Positions 19,621-33,749 of a stretch of DNA of 64,000 nt are shown in pieces (the first letter of the stretch is position 1; every line of letters starts with the position of its first letter). A program made the position numbers and the translations under genes. The notes beneath the pieces were generated by a model. It saw only the letters and a program-made list of their open reading frames with translations. It ran no database searches and was not told the DNA's origin. Location: positions 186,001 through 250,000 of the IMG/VR virus record IMGVR_UViG_3300050821_002957; one strand, written 5' to 3'.

Positions 19621-20112
19621 ATGATCTGTAAGAAATGCCAAAATCGTATCCCTACTCGCATTGTAATCGAAGGCCGTCGCCGAAACCTTCAGCGCCGCAA
19701 GTATTGTTTAAAGTGCTCGCCATTCGGAGTCCACAACACTGGCGACCCACAAAAAATTTCTCTTCGAGGTACAGATCGAAAATGCGAAGGATGTATCAAC
19801 ATGATAGAACGTCGAAGACGATATTGTTCATCATGCATAAGCCGGATGCGCCGTCACAAAAGAAAACAGGTTGGTGTAGATGTGTTGGGAGGAAAATGTA
19901 TGGATTGCGGCTATAATCGATGTCTGGCTGCTCTCTCATTTCATCACCGTGATCCTTCAAAAAAGGAATTTACGATCAGTGAATTTTCGAGAACTACGAT
20001 GTCTCGATTCATTGCCGAAGTAAAGAAGTGTGATTTGGTTTGTGCTACATGCCACATCGAGAGGCACTATTTGAAAGATGGAGCCGAGTGGGAGAATCGA
20101 ACTCCCGAATGA
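19621..20112 (+). CDS. HNH endonuclease, homing type, overlapping the 3' end of a tRNA gene
   Basis: GGKCMDCGY..ALSFHHRDP..KCDLVCATCH. Confidence 0.88.
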   Translation: MICKKCQNRIPTRIVIEGRRRNLQRRKYCLKCSPFGVHNTGDPQKISLRGTDRKCEGCINMIERRRRYCSSCISRMRRHKRKQVGVDVLGGKCMDCGYNRCLAALSFHHRDPSKKEFTISEFSRTTMSRFIAEVKKCDLVCATCHIERHYLKDGAEWENRTPE

Positions 20113-20153
20113 TCGCTTTGCAGGCGAATACCTTACCACTTGGTTAACTCGGC
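20079..20153 (-). tRNA. tRNA-Cys(GCA)
   Basis: Acceptor GCCGAGT/ACTCGGC, T loop TTCGATT, anticodon loop CT-GCA-AA, encoded CCA. Confidence 0.93.
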
Positions 20154-27493: not shown

Positions 27494-27546
27494 GTTAATT
27501 TTTCATAAACATGCAGAAATGTTTTAGGTTACCCAAAAGATAGGAT

Positions 27547-28062
27547 CTAGTGACCATCTGACGACCAATGAGGAGGATCGGATAACAATTTGATGACACC
27601 GAATTTCGCACCGGCTGCATGAAGAGTAATAGGACCGTCGATCAGTGTACCATCGGCCAACGTGATGGATGCGCCTGGATAATGAATGTCCATGTCTACA
27701 GCAAGACGTTGGGTATGTCGAGAAGTAAGTGCCGGTGGATAGACAATCCCATAGCCCACAGTCATCTGTTTCGCCGCAACAATAGATGCTGAGAGGTTTC
27801 CATGATCCCACTGAATGTTCACGCCTGCCATCACTGGAACAGCACTGGGCGCAATCTGGCTGGCAGCAATCATAGCGGAGTAATGCATCAGAAAGGCACG
27901 CTCTGCTGGTCGATAGGTCGCAGAGATAGTTACTGTAGCACCCGCAGTTTGTAATGCAGAGATGAACGTCTTGCAGTTAGTCTTGAAAGGATCGATCAAA
28001 TCGTCAAGAGAGACGGAGGTAGGAAAAAGTTCGCACCAATTTGGTCCAGATAAAATAGTCAC
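27547..28062 (-). CDS. Peptidase M15-type cell wall hydrolase, candidate endolysin
   Basis: YRP..R, SRH-x6-D, DPPH Zn ligands; late promoter 5 nt before GTG. Confidence 0.75.
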   Translation of the reverse strand: MTILSGPNWCELFPTSVSLDDLIDPFKTNCKTFISALQTAGATVTISATYRPAERAFLMHYSAMIAASQIAPSAVPVMAGVNIQWDHGNLSASIVAAKQMTVGYGIVYPPALTSRHTQRLAVDMDIHYPGASITLADGTLIDGPITLHAAGAKFGVIKLLSDPPHWSSDGH

Positions 28063-28087
28063 ATCTTTATTTATCTGGACACAATAA

Positions 28088-28117
28088 GAAGCCCCGACTT
28101 TTTAGATCGGGGCTTCG
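28088..28117 (-). terminator. Intrinsic terminator
   Basis: gaagccccga / tcggggcttc inverted repeat. Confidence 0.7.
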
Positions 28118-28171
28118 GATACTGACCTTGGAAAGGTCGGGAGAATTACGTCTCCATCGATAGTGAAATAA

Positions 28172-29254
28172 TTACTGCGCTGATGCCGTTTCTTCGGGAG
28201 CAGCTACCGAAACCACCTGATGACCATTCATTGCAGCTTCGCCGATAGCCGTCGCAGTGGATGCCAGATCCTTCTTGGATACGGTTTGCTTGACGGTTGC
28301 GCCGATGAAGGGCTTCCATTTGGTTTTGATCACGTCGGCACGCAACGCATCGAATGCGAGTAACATGGCACGACGAATGAAGATCGGACGAGTTTTGTCA
28401 CGCTGGCCGGTTGCGAACGTCTCGACCAATTCCGACCGCAGAGCATCAACAGGATTGCCCTTGGGCAGCGAATTCTCCAACGGATTGAAGAAGGCTTCCA
28501 TGAACAACATGCCCTTTTCACGGTCGATGTCGAACATCTTCAGGGCGGCGGCGGCGTAAATCGGAATGCGCTTCGTGCCCAGTTCGTCGTTCACGCTGCC
28601 GTGCGAGCGAAACAGAGTTGCGATGGTTTCGTAGACCGAATCGAAATACTCACGCTTGGTCTTGTACTCGTCGTTGATTTCGAGACGAGACATTGCCTTG
28701 TTGATGCTGCCCGGTTTGATGTTCTCTGGGAGCATGTAGTATTCGACCATCTCCCACTTGTGAGTGTCCACGTTTGCAAAATGGGCGAGGTTGGTCTTGG
28801 TGCGCTTTGCAACGCCCATGACGAGAAGATTGTCGATCAGAGCTTCGATGTTATCCACATGAATGCCGGTCAGCACTGTGGTTTCATAGCTCACTTCTGG
28901 ATTGATCTCTGCTGCTTTCAGCACTGCGTTGCACCGATGTTGCAAATCGATGCCGTCTGCGGTGTCCGTAAACAACAGAGGTTCTCCAGTGTTGCGAAAA
29001 TGTCCATTAAGCATCTGCCGTGCCATCGATTCGACCACCGACCAGTTGATCGGGCGATTCGTGACCTTGGGGTCCTTAAGGTTGAACTTCAGCAAAAATT
29101 CGGCAAGCTGCTTGTTTAGGCACACCGTGAACACTTTCACTTTGCTGTCTTTGCTGGATGCTTCGAGCGTCTTATTGAGAAGTGCCAGGGCTTTGCCTGA
29201 CCCTTTCAACGTTTGGATCTGTTGATCGTCAATCGTTTGAAGATTGGTAGTCAT
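28172..29254 (-). CDS. ParB/DGQHR-like domain protein with variant DLQHR motif
   Basis: LAEFLL..NRPI..V..MARQM..G..TGEPLLF..IDLQHR..AV. Confidence 0.65.
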   Translation of the reverse strand: MTTNLQTIDDQQIQTLKGSGKALALLNKTLEASSKDSKVKVFTVCLNKQLAEFLLKFNLKDPKVTNRPINWSVVESMARQMLNGHFRNTGEPLLFTDTADGIDLQHRCNAVLKAAEINPEVSYETTVLTGIHVDNIEALIDNLLVMGVAKRTKTNLAHFANVDTHKWEMVEYYMLPENIKPGSINKAMSRLEINDEYKTKREYFDSVYETIATLFRSHGSVNDELGTKRIPIYAAAALKMFDIDREKGMLFMEAFFNPLENSLPKGNPVDALRSELVETFATGQRDKTRPIFIRRAMLLAFDALRADVIKTKWKPFIGATVKQTVSKKDLASTATAIGEAAMNGHQVVSVAAPEETASAQ

Positions 29255-29342
29255 AGAAGTCTTTCTTAGTTCTGAATTGAAAACGATTGGCTCAACACGC
29301 CGAGAATTTTTGACGTTTGTCCTTTCGTCTGCCTTCTCTTGT

Positions 29343-29359
29343 AGCAACGTTGATGCCAA
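29343..29359 (-). promoter_or_regulatory. Sigma54-type (-24/-12) promoter
   Basis: TTGGCATCAACGTTGCT with GG and GC 12 nt apart, 88 nt upstream of ATG 29254. Confidence 0.55.
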
Positions 29360-29591
29360 ACCTGTCTCACACACGAAAACCACGCTTTTTCAACATACGA
29401 AATTCTGTCTTCGCTGTTGTTTCACTTTTTGGATGCAAAATTTTCTGCAAAAGATGCACGAAACTTTGGTTGTGATGAAAAAACTGCAATTTTTGTATAC
29501 CACCAGTGACGACATATGGACACTAGGTGACGGCCATTAGACATCATTGGCGCAGGTAACATATGTTAAATGGCGACACATGACCCATAAA

Positions 29592-29845
29592 GTAAAAGGG
29601 AGCAAAGTCTATGCGACTCGGCTCCCTGGACTACAAGCATTTGCGAACTATTCAATCAAGTATATAATGAGACCAGTGCTATTGCCTGTTGGTAATCATC
29701 CGCACACCCGGCAACTACCAAGTCCCCGTTGAAGTCGATGCGACGGACGTGAACATTTCTAGTTCTTTCGACCCGGCCCCGAAATGGTCAACCGTGAGTT
29801 TCAGGTCTAGCACTCAACGTTCGCTCGTCACTAATGGCTGAGTAC
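29592..29845 (-). ncRNA. Putative structured noncoding RNA of about 250 nt
   Basis: TTGACA-17-TACATT promoter (29880-29852); several helices; terminator hairpin 29598-29626 plus T run; no credible ORF. Confidence 0.55.
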
Positions 29846-29942
29846 ACTATTAATGTACCACCTGGAGTGATCCTTGTCAAACTTGGTACATACATATTTA
29901 CGAGTTGACAAAGTTACATCTAATATGCTAGGCTAAATCCGC

Positions 29943-30411
29943 ATGATAAAAGTCACGAAAATCATTGAAACGTGCGGAGCCTGTCCTTCGCAGTGGAGTG
30001 GAAGAACTGACGACGACAAATACCTCTACATTCGTTATCGTTGGGGATTTTTACGGATCGAATTAGAGGGTGATACAATATTTGAAGGTACGTTCGGCGA
30101 CAGCCTTGATGGTGTCATGACCTTTGAAGAGCTTGTCGAGCATACCGCACAAGAAATCGATTTTTCTGAAGCAAAATGGGTCGCCAGCAGAGAGGAAGTC
30201 CATGAATTACACTACTTTTGAAAAATTTTTGGAAGAAAAACGTCAAAAAGCTCCAAAAATGAAGAAAATAAACAAGTTTTACTGGTTTTTGGCAATCGGG
30301 ACAGCGTTTTTTTGCATTCTCGTCCAGCTTTATGGCATCTATGCAGAAGCGCAGATGCAAGAAAACTACTGTCAAGGAAAAGCCTTCATCGAACGCCTCT
30401 ATAGCGAATAA
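29943..30411 (+). CDS. Two hypothetical ORFs (29943-30221; membrane protein 30202-30411)
   Basis: Promoter TTGACA 29905; CPSQW motif; hydrophobic helix. Confidence 0.65.
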
Positions 30412-30414
30412 TTT

Positions 30415-30455
30415 TTGATACATCTATTGACTTCGGTCGGCATTTTTGCTAAGAT
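30415..30455 (+). promoter_or_regulatory. Sigma70-type promoter with palindrome
   Basis: TTGATACATCTA-TTGACT-17-TAAGAT with TG extension. Confidence 0.7.
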
Positions 30456-30463
30456 GGACTCAT

Positions 30464-31108
30464 ATGAAACGTGAGATTGCCTACGAAGGAATGAAAACGC
30501 CGTGGGGTAAAGCGCAAAGTGCTCAGGAAGTCATCACTGGCATGTACTTCGTCACCACCGCTGGTCATGGCGGCATGAAGCTCAGTATCAAGTTGAACAA
30601 ACTGATCCCGGACTACATGCGGAACCAGGGTGGATGGTACGAAGAGGACATCGACTGGTGCATTCCTTACGTAATTCTGGCAACTCACGATCTCTTGACC
30701 AATCCCAAGTTTGGTGAAGACGTAGACAAGGCTGTTGCCCTACTTCGGAATTGGAAGCCGATGATGTACGAGCGCTTTTTCGATGTCGTCCTCAAACCCG
30801 GCGAGTCCATGAAGAAGGACGAAATGACATGGCAGTCGTACAACGCCGACAAGTTGCAAGTGCTCGCCGCCTGGGGTTCCGGCCAAAATGTTCGTCTTTC
30901 CCCGCCAGCATACGGTGACGGTCCTCTTGTCGAATACGTAGTCAAGCCGGGTTTCGTTCTCGTAGTCGCTGCTGTCGGCGGTCGCACCAATCACATCACA
31001 GAACACGAAGAGGCATATTATCTTGTGCCCGACGCCGAATATCAGGCTCATGGTCCTCATGGCTTCATCGTCGATCCAACCCATCATCAAAAGGTGAGTC
31101 ATGTTTGA
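30464..31108 (+). CDS. DUF7007-like protein
   Basis: TPWG..TAGHGG..WYEED.DW. Confidence 0.7.
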   Translation: MKREIAYEGMKTPWGKAQSAQEVITGMYFVTTAGHGGMKLSIKLNKLIPDYMRNQGGWYEEDIDWCIPYVILATHDLLTNPKFGEDVDKAVALLRNWKPMMYERFFDVVLKPGESMKKDEMTWQSYNADKLQVLAAWGSGQNVRLSPPAYGDGPLVEYVVKPGFVLVVAAVGGRTNHITEHEEAYYLVPDAEYQAHGPHGFIVDPTHHQKVSHV

Positions 31109-31279
31109 AAATTTGAAACACATCTTAGAAGTTTCGGAGCTTGACATCAAGACCGAATTGAATCGTGTCGAAGCACACCTAGAAACGATTCGAGGAAAAG
31201 CTGATGGTCCGATTCTCCGAGTGTACGAAAATTATCGAGATAAATTGAAGCAACTTTTGAAACAAGAAGGGAAGTAGTC

Positions 31280-32959
31280 ATGCAATTTCAATCACCAGAC
31301 GGCAAGATTGTTGAAGGTTGGATGCAAGCACACCGACCGACCAAGGGTGACATCCTCTACTACAACCAAGAGGGTTTCTTGCAGGCTGTCCGAAACAAAG
31401 AGATGTTGATCACGACGTTCGGTTGGAGTATGCCGGTGACCCATCGTGACACTGGCAAGCTCACTGGTTTCGTCTACGCCAACCGAGACCCTTCAGCCTC
31501 TCTGATCGACACCTGGATTCGCATCATCTACAACGGTGACGAAATTTATCCGGTCATCCAAACCGAGAAGTGCTCTATCTGTGGCCGGATCGCCAAAGGC
31601 ATTCATCCCAGAGAAGGCTGCATCTTCGGTCGCATGGAAAAGGAACGTGCTGAAGAAGCAATTCGTCTCGCAAAATGGCGTGATGATCGTGTCAAAAATC
31701 TTGTTAGTGGATTCTTCGGATATCGAGAAGAGCATCCGACCGTCAACACCATCGTGAAGTGCGCCACCGACATCACACAATACACCGCAGAGGGTGCGTA
31801 TGGCGAGTACCGTATGCATCTCCACCATGTCCTGTCCTTCCACGGCAAAGGCTACATGCCAGCGCTGTATCGAAAGCTGGCACAAGGTGGTATCGAATGG
31901 GAAGGCAACGATAAAGTGTACAAGACTTACGACGAAGCCATCGAAGCCGGAAAGAAATATCTGACAGATCGTGTCAAGCGGGACAACGAATCCTGGGCCA
32001 ATTTTGAAGCACAGCAGGCCGATATCAAGCGCCGGAAAGAAGCAGGAGAATTTGACAACAAATGATGTTGCCAATGTCTCTCTTTGTTGCTCTCATTGCC
32101 TTCTATTTTGCAGTGCGACCGGCATTCAACATCCAAAAGCTGCGAGACGAAGCCTGGGCGACAATTTTGAAGCAACAGGGAAGAACGTTGATTCTCAGAC
32201 AGGAAGTTTGGAATGATTTTAAAGAAAATTTCTGAACGAGCAATGGGCACGCCGGTCGAAGGCATCGAGATTCGCCTGACCACTGCCGAAGCCAAGTTAG
32301 TCCACAAAATTTTGTGTCATGGTGCAGCGAATCCACCAAGAGATCGAAGCGGAAACTCCAACTATGAAGAGCAGGAAACGGCTCGACAATTAGCTATCAA
32401 GATGGAAGAGACCTGGAAGATTCAACTATGAAGAGCAACTATCCACCAGGAATGACAACTGGTCGCAGCGGAACTGACTGGAAAGTGCCTCAGATGTGCG
32501 ACAAAGGTCATGTCTGGACGACACCAATGTTCAACGAGCTTGGTGGCGCTTTCTACGTCGATGAAGACAGTGGGCCGATGTGTCCGCAATGCAAAGGTCT
32601 GGAAACTGGTAACGTTGACCTTGCGGAGCGCACGTACAAAGTCATTTGTGAAGCAGGACAAGCTGACAAGGTTTTGCATGTCGGCCCGGAGGAACCCAGC
32701 TATGCCTTTTAAGGAAGACAATTCGCTTTGCCACTGTGGATGCGGCCAGCTTGCTCGTCTGGTCAAGAATCCCATCAATCGCTTCGAGCAGTTTTGCAAG
32801 GAAATCGAAGCAGGACCATTTTCGATTTTATCCGCCAAAGATGAAATCAAGCAGTACATTCGTCTCTCGATGGAAGATGGTCATCGTCGTGGCTTCCATT
32901 CAGGATATCAAAAAGCTGCGACCGAAGCTGCCGAAGATGCAGCCGGTGAGAGCATATGA
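31280..32959 (+). CDS. Hypothetical ORFs (31280-32065, 32213-32431, 32428-32712, 32702-32959)
   Basis: Co-oriented coupled ORFs. Confidence 0.6.
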
Positions 32960-33135
32960 AAAGAGGCCGAAAACCAAAGTTCACACAAGAAGAGATTGAT
33001 CACATGAAAGAACTCTATCACCGCAAAGAAGGAACTCGGTGGGGCATTGGTGACATCGCTCGTCTGTATCGCACTACGTCGGCGACAGTGAACCGGGCTA
33101 TCGATGGAAAATTGCCTGCGAAAGACGCTGTATGA
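32956..33135 (+). CDS. 59-aa helix-turn-helix DNA-binding protein, absent from the ORF track
   Basis: GRKPKFTQEEI..IGDIARLYRTTSATVNRAI, resolvase-type HTH; ATGA coupling at both ends. Confidence 0.75.
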   Translation: MKRGRKPKFTQEEIDHMKELYHRKEGTRWGIGDIARLYRTTSATVNRAIDGKLPAKDAV

Positions 33136-33749
33136 TTCATCAGGACCAGATTTATCACATGTTCGCCGACACTCGAATGTTTTTCGGCATTCCTAATTTT
33201 TGGAATGTCGTGACGAATCTTCCATTCATTGTCGTTGCGATTTACGGTCTATGTCGTCTCAAAAAAATCAATGACGTGAACGAGATGACAAACAAATACG
33301 TCATCCTGATCGCAACTCTGATGATTGGCCTCGGCTCCAGCTATTATCATTGGAACCCAAATGACAACACTCTGCTGTGGGATCGTCTTCCAATGGCTAT
33401 CGTCTTCATGGGAATTGTTGCCGCCACTCTGAAGAGATTTTATGGTAGTTTGGTCTGCCTCGGAATTGGAAGTGTCTTGTGGTGGCACTTTACCGGCGAG
33501 CTTCTGCCGTATGTCATTGTCCAATTTGGAGCCTTGCTGTTAGTGACCATATTCGACTGGAAACGTCTGTGGGCCGTGATTATGATGTACGCCATAGCAA
33601 AGGTACATGAACACTTCGACCATCAAATCTATCAAGCCTTTCCGCTCAGTGGTCACTCGATGAAACATCTCTTCGCTGCGGCTGCGATCCTGACGTACAT
33701 AAATTTGACGATGGTAGCGAGAAAATATGACGATCTACGACACGAGTAA
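33132..33749 (+). CDS. Alkaline ceramidase-like (CREST) membrane hydrolase
   Basis: NVVTNLPF, GSSYYH, WDRLPM, SGHSMKH; several TM helices. Confidence 0.8.
   Translation: MIHQDQIYHMFADTRMFFGIPNFWNVVTNLPFIVVAIYGLCRLKKINDVNEMTNKYVILIATLMIGLGSSYYHWNPNDNTLLWDRLPMAIVFMGIVAATLKRFYGSLVCLGIGSVLWWHFTGELLPYVIVQFGALLLVTIFDWKRLWAVIMMYAIAKVHEHFDHQIYQAFPLSGHSMKHLFAAAAILTYINLTMVARKYDDLRHE

What the first reader, a model, noticed from the sequence alone, without database searches (positions are those of the whole stretch)
29500..29900. Overlapping sense/antisense noncoding RNA locus
Seen: a minus-strand promoter (29880-29852) gives about 250 nt ending at a terminator (29626-29594). A plus-strand TTGCGA-16-TATAAT (29641-29668) would start near 29675, exactly where AGTGCTA pairs with TAGCACT (29808-14) to close a 140-nt domain. 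Internal helices: 29689-97/29713-21, 29768-73/29786-91, 29751-57/29816-22. The 5' end of the minus RNA (29825-38) also complements two 8-mers beyond the terminator (29533-40 and 29505-12), in pseudoknot order. Inference: an antisense-controlled switch or attenuator upstream of the ParB-like gene, reminiscent of plasmid copy-control RNA pairs.
Basis: partly seen in the sequence, partly recalled or inferred. Interest (0 to 1): 0.6.

Follow-up and report, generated by a model that had tools for sequence, protein, structure and literature searches.

The report
Structured small RNA of a megaphage

Summary
The window is part of a 405,631-bp IMG/VR virus record. The 690-nt gap at 29255-29942 holds a real minus-strand transcription unit. 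It has a promoter (29880-29852) of a class found 82 times in this phage, against 3.4 expected. The predicted 5' end is G29845. A conserved core runs 29845-29665, followed by a variable AU-rich linker and a hairpin with a U tract (29627-29586). Only two metagenomic relatives have the element. The core is 77-82% identical among the three, against 35-60% for the rest of the gap. No frame is conserved. A four-hairpin consensus fold carries 7 compensatory pairs and many G-U pairs that fit only the minus strand. Rfam has no match. Two soil metatranscriptomes each hold a contig over just this RNA (29634-29846 and 29620-29876). The downstream 360-aa gene has its own conserved sigma-54-like -24/-12 motif. 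Five relatives have that gene without the RNA, so a stand-alone small RNA is more likely than a leader. The plus-strand promoter is real in sequence, is matched in one relative and is absent in the other. The function of the RNA is unknown. "ParB-like" is only weakly supported.

The parts
29852..29880 (-). Promoter of the small RNA: TTGACA, 17 nt, TACATT, with a TGn extension
   Evidence: Conserved in L004 and L005. Member of the phage-wide class TTGACN-N13-15-TGnTAnnnT.
29586..29845 (-). Predicted small RNA of about 260 nt, from the 5' end G29845 to the end of the U tract. The true 3' end is not mapped.
   Evidence: Promoter geometry. RNA contigs at 29634-29846 and 29620-29876. Covariance model match at 29579-29846.
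29665..29845 (-). Conserved structured core. P1 pairs 29845-29837 with 29818-29810. P2 pairs 29790-29778 with 29762-29750. P3 pairs 29749-29737 with 29708-29697. P3b pairs 29728-29721 with 29716-29709. P4 pairs 29688-29684 with 29679-29674.
   Evidence: 77-82% identity against 35-60% in the flanks. RNAalifold and pair counts. Coordinates checked.
29628..29664 (-). Variable AU-rich linker between the core and the terminator
   Evidence: 40-61% identity with a 12-nt indel.
29586..29627 (-). Intrinsic-terminator-like hairpin (29627-29597) followed by UUUUACUUUAU
   Evidence: I3. Hairpins at the same place in L004 and L005.
29641..29668 (+). Promoter-like site on the opposite strand (TTGCGA-16-TATAAT), inside the linker. 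Function not shown.
   Evidence: A counterpart in L004 and none in L005.
29343..29358 (-). Sigma-54-like -24/-12 motif TGGCATCAACGTTGCT, 88 nt before the start codon of the 360-aa gene
   Evidence: The same GG-N10-GC register is found in L004-L008.
28172..29254 (-). 360-aa gene downstream of the RNA on the same strand. It has a weak ParB/Srx-like N-terminal fold.
29905..29934 (+). Divergent promoter of the leaderless 92-aa gene (ATG at 29943)

Best explanation
This is a stand-alone gene for a structured small non-coding RNA of a 405-kb soil phage. Shown: a promoter of the phage's standard sigma-70-type class, with an extended -10, sits at 29880-29852. It would start transcription at about G29845, which is the first base of a 5'-terminal hairpin (P1). 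Shown: a conserved core of about 180 nt folds into four hairpins (P1, P2, P3/P3b, P4). Shown: a variable AU-rich linker and a GC-rich hairpin with a U tract follow the core. Inferred: this hairpin ends the transcript near 29586. Inferred: the RNA accumulates as a discrete species that is separate from the mRNA of the 360-aa gene downstream, because that gene has its own sigma-54-like promoter. Inferred and untested: the RNA acts in trans, either as a base-pairing regulator or as a protein-binding or decoy RNA. Its invariant unpaired stretches would be the contact surfaces, namely the P1 loop (CAUUAGUGACGAGCGAAC) and the GAUUAnnAACAGGC segment. Its target is unknown.
For: The promoter is conserved in all three homologues with its TG extension. 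It belongs to a class with 82 sites in the genome against 3.4+-1.0 in shuffles, and 50 of these sit 4-12 nt before a start codon that opens at least 40 aa. This one has no conserved ORF. Every frame of the core has stops, the indels are 1, 2 and 4 nt long, and peptide fragments jump between frames in the three sequences.

The core is 77-82% identical against 35-60% for the rest of the gap. The consensus fold has 64 pairs, 93.7% of cells paired and 7 pairs changed on both sides. Only 1 of 500 shuffles reaches this, and slid controls give 31-42% paired. Each sequence has 11-15 G-U pairs, so the same fold loses 8-13 pairs on the opposite strand. Fold z-scores on this strand are -2.2, -2.45 and -1.9, against +0.11 on the other strand. 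A terminator hairpin is kept in all three with different stem sequences.

Two soil metatranscriptome runs from two studies each hold a contig on just this RNA: 29634-29846 in X2 and 29620-29876 in X1. No listed contig covers 29463-29613 or 29916-30066. In X2 this contig is one of only two pieces on 4.5 kb.

The downstream gene carries a sigma-54-like motif in 6 of 9 loci. Five loci have the gene without the RNA, including L008, which keeps the gene order.
Against: There are only three distinct sequences, so the covariation statistics are weak. The structure was also derived from the same alignment it is counted on. The RNA evidence consists of contigs, which show neither strand nor true ends nor level, and DNA carry-over cannot be formally excluded. 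The contigs stop 35-50 nt short of the U tract, and X1 runs 30 nt beyond the predicted 5' end. The U tracts in L004 and above all in L005 are poor, so termination may be partial. The RNA always lies upstream of the 360-aa gene on the same strand (3 of 3), which also fits a leader. No target, partner or phenotype is known. The sigma-54 reading of the -24/-12 motif is by consensus only.
Confidence: 0.6

Rival explanations
1. The RNA is a cis-acting leader: a riboswitch-like or protein- or RNA-dependent attenuator. The conserved core would sense a signal and decide whether the hairpin at 29627-29586 stops transcription or lets it run into the 360-aa gene. The short RNA seen in the libraries would then be the terminated leader.
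For: The order promoter, conserved structured domain, terminator, gene is on one strand in all three homologues. The long transcript 29845-29255 folds with z -3.0. The U tracts are weak in L004 and L005, which fits conditional termination. Short RNAs residing in 5' UTRs and made by premature termination are described for jumbo phage phiKZ (PMC10914365).
Against: About 330 nt of poorly conserved sequence lie between the terminator and the start codon. A conserved sigma-54-like promoter sits within that stretch. No conserved antiterminator pairing was seen. The linker that would have to carry it is the least conserved part. Five related loci have the gene without the RNA. No contig lies on 29463-29613. 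Rfam gives no riboswitch match.
Confidence: 0.17
2. This is the first reader's model: a sense/antisense RNA pair. A plus-strand RNA from the 29641-29668 promoter (start near 29675) would pair with the minus-strand RNA and control termination or stability, as in the copy-control systems of plasmids pIP501 and pT181.
For: The site has a perfect -10 TATAAT with TTGCGA at 16 nt. A promoter-like site with a TG extension lies at the equivalent place and orientation in L004. The layout resembles pIP501-type attenuation, with the antisense promoter between the target region and the terminator (my knowledge of that system). The X1 contig runs 30 nt past the minus-strand 5' end.
Against: L005 has no counterpart. 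The site is not of the phage's promoter class. It sits in an AT-rich linker where -10-like hexamers arise easily. No plus-strand terminator is conserved, so the transcript would run into the 92-aa gene. The plus-strand fold has z +0.11. G-U pairs favour the minus strand. Both contigs include the antisense promoter itself and 40-55 nt upstream of its start, and one ends within 1 nt of the predicted minus-strand start. The regulated gene has its own promoter.
Confidence: 0.1
3. The conservation acts on DNA, not RNA. The core would be a protein-binding region, for instance an upstream activating region for the sigma-54-like promoter or a binding site of the ParB/Srx-like protein. Its transcription would be incidental.
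For: The region lies 290-500 bp upstream of a sigma-54-like promoter, and such promoters need upstream activator sites (established knowledge). The neighbouring protein has a weak ParB-like fold. In the window alone, RNA positions 19-64 are complementary to the -24/-12 region.
Against: Compensatory changes keep helices, and the G-U pairs are strand-specific. No conserved palindrome or repeat array is present. A dedicated conserved promoter and terminator bracket the region exactly. RNA contigs coincide with it. Relatives with the sigma-54-like motif and the gene lack the region.
Confidence: 0.06

Closest known systems
Short structured RNAs of jumbo phage phiKZ seen by ONT-cappable-seq and Grad-seq (PMC10914365)
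   Same: They are phage-encoded, abundant, short, structured RNA species. Each is bounded by a promoter and a terminator and lies upstream of a protein gene. Their function is unknown.
   Different: There is no sequence or Rfam relationship. The phiKZ species are described as residing in 5' UTRs, whereas here the downstream gene appears to have its own promoter. The phage and habitat differ (soil, host unknown).
Antisense-RNA transcriptional attenuation of plasmids pIP501 (RNAIII) and pT181 (RNAI), compared from my knowledge
   Same: The layout is alike: a sense promoter, a leader, a promoter-like site on the opposite strand inside the leader, then a terminator before a gene.
   Different: The antisense promoter has a counterpart in one of the two relatives, and no antisense terminator is conserved. 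No alternative antiterminator fold was found. The downstream gene is not a replication initiator, has its own promoter and lies 330 nt away.
Bacterial and prophage trans-acting small RNAs with intrinsic terminators, such as DicF (compared from my knowledge)
   Same: It has its own promoter, a length of 50-300 nt, a conserved 5' part, an AU-rich stretch before a terminator hairpin with a U tail, and no ORF.
   Different: It is much more structured than typical seed-type sRNAs, with four conserved hairpins. No target or chaperone is known and there is no homology.
Riboswitches and other terminator-coupled leaders
   Same: A conserved folded domain is followed by a terminator hairpin on the strand of a downstream gene.
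   Different: There is no Rfam match. The linker, which would be the expression platform, is not conserved. The gene is distant and has its own promoter. The element is absent from most loci that carry the gene.
Type III toxin-antitoxin loci (ToxIN)
   Same: The order is promoter, non-coding RNA, terminator, protein gene.
   Different: The RNA has no tandem repeats. The downstream protein is not ToxN-like and gives no Pfam hit.

Membership tests
Any Rfam 15 family | A covariance-model match at or near the family's gathering score | tested here: not met
   The whole window at gathering threshold gives only a tRNA at 20082-20153. Positions 29200-30000 at E <= 10 give only a 15-bit snoU61 chance match.
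Independent small-RNA gene | Own promoter, conserved in homologues | tested here: met
   TTGAC(A/G), a 16-17-nt spacer and TGnTACAYT are present in all three, and the site belongs to an 82-member phage promoter class.
Independent small-RNA gene | Intrinsic terminator at the 3' end | tested here: inconclusive
   The hairpin is conserved in all three. The U tract is good in the window, moderate in L004 and poor in L005. The simple scan did not call it. The 3' end is not mapped.
Independent small-RNA gene | No conserved reading frame | tested here: met
   There are stops in all six frames of the core. The indels are not multiples of three, and the frames differ between homologues.
Independent small-RNA gene | A discrete transcript of the predicted strand and size | tested here: inconclusive
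   Contigs at 29634-29846 and 29620-29876 in two metatranscriptomes fit the predicted unit. Contigs give neither strand nor true ends.
Independent small-RNA gene | Transcription unit separate from the neighbouring gene | tested here: inconclusive
   A sigma-54-like motif is conserved before the gene. No contig lies on 29463-29613. The gene occurs without the RNA in 5 loci. No TSS data exist.
Structured RNA (conserved secondary structure) | Helices kept by compensatory changes | tested here: met
   7 of 64 pairs are changed on both sides and 93.7% of cells are paired. 1 of 500 shuffles reaches this. There are only 3 sequences, so the support is modest.
Antisense-RNA attenuation (pIP501/pT181 type) | Conserved antisense promoter and a terminated countertranscript | tested here: not met
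   The promoter-like site has a counterpart in L004 but none in L005. No conserved plus-strand terminator was found. The plus-strand fold has z +0.11.
Antisense-RNA attenuation (pIP501/pT181 type) | Mutually exclusive terminator and antiterminator folds in the sense leader | not tested
   No conserved alternative pairing was noticed by eye, but no systematic search was made. The linker is the least conserved part.
Riboswitch or cis-regulatory leader | Constant association with, and closeness to, the regulated gene | tested here: not met
   The terminator lies 330 nt from the start codon. The gene is present without the element in L006-L011.
Type III toxin-antitoxin RNA | Tandem repeats in the RNA | tested here: not met
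   Tandem Repeats Finder gives no rows for 29200-29950.
ParB family (neighbouring 360-aa protein) | Sequence match to a ParB/Srx domain model | tested here: not met
   Pfam, NCBIfam and the PDB sequence profile give no relevant hit. The only hit is phrog_5931, of unknown function.
ParB family (neighbouring 360-aa protein) | ParB/Srx fold of the N-terminal domain | tested here: inconclusive
   The AF2 model has pLDDT 75.5. ParB, Noc, KorB, Srx and BrxU top the lists, but at Foldseek E >= 0.2 and VIA Z 3-4.7 over residues 39-162. A GIDLQHR motif recalls the DGQHR motif of ParB-like and DUF262 proteins (my reading).

The most novel reading that the evidence does not exclude
The conserved 180-nt core is the sensor domain of a new kind of phage regulatory RNA that is functionally tied to the ParB/Srx-like gene next to it. 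It could be a ligand- or protein-responsive attenuator that adds a second input to the gene's sigma-54-type promoter. Or it could be an RNA partner of that protein. The opposite-strand promoter would supply a countertranscript in some lineages.
Probability: 0.1. Interest if true: 0.7.

Novelty: new member of a known kind. Interest (0 to 1): 0.42.

Why it matters
Very large phages of uncultivated soil bacteria are known almost only from DNA, and their RNA biology is essentially blank. This locus is a concrete, testable non-coding RNA gene of such a phage. It has defined ends, a fold and evidence of presence in environmental RNA. It also comes with a clear picture of the phage's own promoter class, which mostly drives leaderless mRNAs. 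That class points to about 14 further promoters without an ORF. If a target or partner of the RNA were found, it would be one of the first functional small RNAs of a megaphage. As it stands it is a new RNA family of a familiar kind, not a new mechanism.

Tried and rejected
More homologues were sought in several ways. blastn against INPHARED phages found nothing. Three IUPAC or protein-pattern scans of IMG/VR with the neighbouring proteins gave only distant, unrelated loci. Two conserved RNA blocks scanned against IMG/VR found nothing. One block against the JGI metagenomes gave 18 hits. Only L015 was real, and it is identical to the window. The same block against 185,579 GTDB genomes gave 25 hits, all chance.

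All 12 contig look-ups for homologues of the 360-aa protein were used. Two gave the RNA. Six gave loci without it. In P0013's contig (L012) the gene starts at base 73, so no upstream DNA was available. Three had no DNA on file, and in P0003's contig the gene also starts at base 68.

Covariance model R1 found no further copy in the genome or the loci. A 16.9-bit match at genome 292668-292852 lacks P2-P4 and lies in an ORF-dense stretch, so it was rejected. A self-blast of the gap against the genome showed no paralogue.

A coding reading was rejected. tRNA, tmRNA and tandem repeats were all absent.

Conserved pairing between the RNA's 5' part and the downstream leader is strong in the window only (-40 against -27.5+-2.5, and -50 against -39.5+-3.9). 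It is absent in L004 and L005, so it was not used.

A plus-strand terminator formed by the inverted repeat around the RNA promoter is not supported, because L004 gives z about 0. A phage sigma-54 or activator was sought. There is no Sigma54_DBD hit. The PF00158 hit is a weak AAA+ match, and that model also rings in all 14 control genomes, so it is uninformative. One literature query failed on syntax.

No alternative genetic code was used.

Full report
Context. The window is bases 186001-250000 of a 405,631-bp IMG/VR virus record, rated complete by CheckV. The finding lies in a 690-nt ORF-poor gap at 29255-29942. On one side is a minus-strand 360-aa gene (28172-29254). On the other is a plus-strand 92-aa gene (29943-30221). 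INPHARED has no similar DNA. Rfam 15 has no match here, either at gathering thresholds or at E <= 10.

The observation. The minus-strand promoter TTGACA-17-TACATT, with TG before the -10, is at 29880-29852. The plus-strand TTGCGA-16-TATAAT is at 29641-29668. The region as a whole has 5 promoter-like sites against 2.4+-1.7 in shuffles, so a single site means little without other support. The minus-strand hairpin 29627-29597 followed by UUUUACUUUAU is real. The simple scan missed it because of its long, internally paired loop.

Homologues. The 360-aa protein has 16 metagenomic relatives at 50-83% identity. I fetched nine of their contigs. Only the two closest carry a region alignable to the gap: L004 (83% protein identity) and L005 (80%). 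A pattern scan of the JGI metagenomes added L015, which is identical to the window and so is the same phage. Scans of IMG/VR and of 185,579 GTDB genomes found nothing further. All comparative statements therefore rest on three distinct sequences.

Conservation. Conservation is concentrated in 29846-29665, at 77-82% identity. The linker (40-61%), the hairpin region (53-75%) and the 330 nt down to the start codon (35-52%) are barely alignable. The core has indels of 1, 2 and 4 nt and stops in all six frames. Short peptide similarities jump between frames in the three sequences, so the region is not coding.

Structure. RNAalifold on the minus-strand RNAs gives five helices followed by the terminator:
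- P1 is a 5'-terminal hairpin that pairs 29845-29837 with 29818-29810.
- P2 pairs 29790-29778 with 29762-29750.
- P3 pairs 29749-29737 with 29708-29697.
- P3b pairs 29728-29721 with 29716-29709.
- P4 pairs 29688-29684 with 29679-29674.

Of 64 pairs, 7 show changes on both sides and 93.7% of cells are paired. Only 1 of 500 column shuffles reaches these values, and sliding the partners by 1-3 columns drops pairing to 31-42%. P2 and P3 are 100% paired with two compensatory pairs each. Each sequence uses 11-15 G-U pairs, so the same fold on the opposite strand loses 8-13 pairs. Single-sequence folds give z -2.2, -2.45 and -1.9 on this strand and +0.11 on the plus strand. With three sequences, and a structure derived from the same alignment, this is supportive but not conclusive.

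On the plus strand, helices a and b keep only 3-5 of their 7-9 pairs in the relatives. Helix d (29751-57 with 29816-22) is kept, but it overlaps the better supported P1 and P2. The two 8-mers beyond the terminator lie in sequence that L004 lacks and L005 has replaced.

Promoter class. The pattern TTGACN-N13-15-TGnTAnnnT occurs 82 times in the phage genome, against 3.4+-1.0 in shuffles. Fifty of these sites are followed 4-12 nt later (mode 6) by a start codon that opens at least 40 aa, which means leaderless mRNAs. The two neighbouring plus-strand promoters, at 29905 and 30427, are of this kind. The RNA promoter belongs to the class but is not followed by a conserved ORF. By the class geometry its start is G29845, the first base of P1. 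The plus-strand TTGCGA-16-TATAAT site is not of this class.

RNA libraries. Two soil metatranscriptome runs from two studies hold parts of 27500-32000. Laid on that stretch (4,501 letters), X2 has only two contigs, and one spans 29634-29846. X1 has nine, and one spans 29620-29876. No listed contig covers 29463-29613 or 29916-30066. Per-contig word depths were 23.1 and 7.1, against 2-4 for the other pieces. The tool warns that such depths are poor measures, so I use them only as a hint. The contigs contain the proposed antisense promoter and 40-55 nt upstream of its start. One of them ends within 1 nt of the predicted minus-strand 5' end. This fits the minus-strand unit. Strand, true ends and absence of DNA carry-over are not shown. 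The contigs stop 35-50 nt short of the U tract. That could be 3'-end under-coverage or processing within the AU-rich linker.

Relation to the downstream gene. TGGCATCAACGTTGCT lies 88 nt before the start codon, at 29358-29343 on the minus strand. It matches the sigma-54 -24/-12 consensus register GG-N10-GC. The same motif stands before the gene in L004, L005, L006, L007 and L008, although those upstream regions are otherwise unalignable. It is not enriched genome-wide. L006-L011 have the gene but not the RNA, and L008 keeps the surrounding gene order. These points favour two separate units.

The 360-aa protein. It has no Pfam, NCBIfam or PDB sequence match. An AF2 model (pLDDT 75.5) brings ParB, Noc, KorB, sulfiredoxin and BrxU to the top of the lists, but only at Foldseek E >= 0.2 and VIA Z 3-4.7. 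'ParB-like' is therefore plausible but unproven.

The antisense model. L004 has a promoter-like site (TTCAAA-18-TATTAT, with TG) at the same place and orientation. L005 has none. No conserved plus-strand terminator was found. I rate a real antisense transcript at roughly one in four, and an antisense-controlled switch at about one in ten.

Comparison with known systems. The nearest described things are the short, abundant, structured RNAs bounded by a promoter and a terminator in jumbo phage phiKZ (PMC10914365). More generally it resembles sRNA genes with intrinsic terminators. It is not a member of any Rfam family. It fails the defining features tested for pIP501/pT181-type attenuation, for riboswitch-like leaders and for type III toxin-antitoxin RNAs.

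Verdict. This is a real, conserved, structured small-RNA gene of a soil megaphage. It is a new family of a known kind and its function is unknown. The antisense and switch part of the finding is not supported.

Noticed in passing
Whole genome G000; in the window at 2671(+), 22360(-), 22379(+), 24728(-), 29880(-), 29905(+), 30427(+), 63328(-) and others: There is a phage-wide promoter class TTGACN-N13-15-TGnTAnnnT with 82 sites against 3.4 expected. About 50 sites sit 4-12 nt (mode 6) before a start codon, so most of these genes would give leaderless mRNAs.
   Followed up: partly
Genome coordinates 7048+, 31488+, 121434-, 129786-, 131172-, 183961+, 234848+ (window 48848), 284590-, 284615+, 285576-, 295629-, 307314-, 315909-, 323933+: Fourteen further promoters of that class have no ORF of at least 60 aa starting within 150 nt. 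They are candidates for more non-coding RNAs or small peptides.
   Followed up: no
Window 29343-29358 (-); L004:2879, L005:2891, L006:2927, L007:2930, L008:2974: A sigma-54-like -24/-12 motif (TGGYMH-N5-WTGCW, GG-N10-GC register) is conserved before the 360-aa gene in 6 of 9 loci. It lies 55-106 nt before the start codon, or 257 nt in L008. It is not enriched elsewhere in the phage. A sigma-54-dependent gene in a phage would be unusual.
   Followed up: partly
Window 29827-29783 (-) against about 29385-29329 (-): In the window only, RNA positions 19-64 can form a long, nearly continuous duplex with the stretch that holds the -24/-12 motif. The duplex energy is -50 kcal/mol against -39.5+-3.9 in shuffles. 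It is absent in L004 and L005. This is unexplained.
   Followed up: partly
Window 29848-29860 and 29884-29896: A 13-nt inverted repeat brackets the RNA promoter. A comparable repeat with different sequence seems present in L004 and L005 by eye. Folds do not support a terminator, and an operator is possible.
   Followed up: partly
Window 29847-29876: The X1 metatranscriptome contig extends 30 nt upstream of the predicted 5' end of the RNA. This could be a second start, opposite-strand transcription or DNA carry-over.
   Followed up: no
L008:2828-3247: A relative keeps the gene order (DUF7007 gene, 360-aa gene, Amidase_2) but has no small RNA. The element is therefore gained or lost as a module.
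   Followed up: partly
Window 20082-20153 (-): A tRNA gene, with an Rfam tRNA score of 62 bits.
   Followed up: no
Window 30446-31108 (+) and 33132-33749 (+): A DUF7007 protein (E 7e-32) is syntenic with the locus in relatives. A 205-aa protein matches the Ceramidase family (E 7e-11).
   Followed up: no
L015 (JGI contig Ga0210388_10000015, 321,331 bp): It is identical to the window over the aligned stretch L015:5673-6015 (window 29560-29900), although the IMG/VR record is 405,631 bp. It is either the same phage assembled twice or a near-identical strain.
   Followed up: no
G000:C1:277501-277872 (-): A 366-aa open frame gives a weak AAA+ match to Sigma54_activat (28 bits). The model also rings in all 14 control genomes, so this says little.
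   Followed up: no
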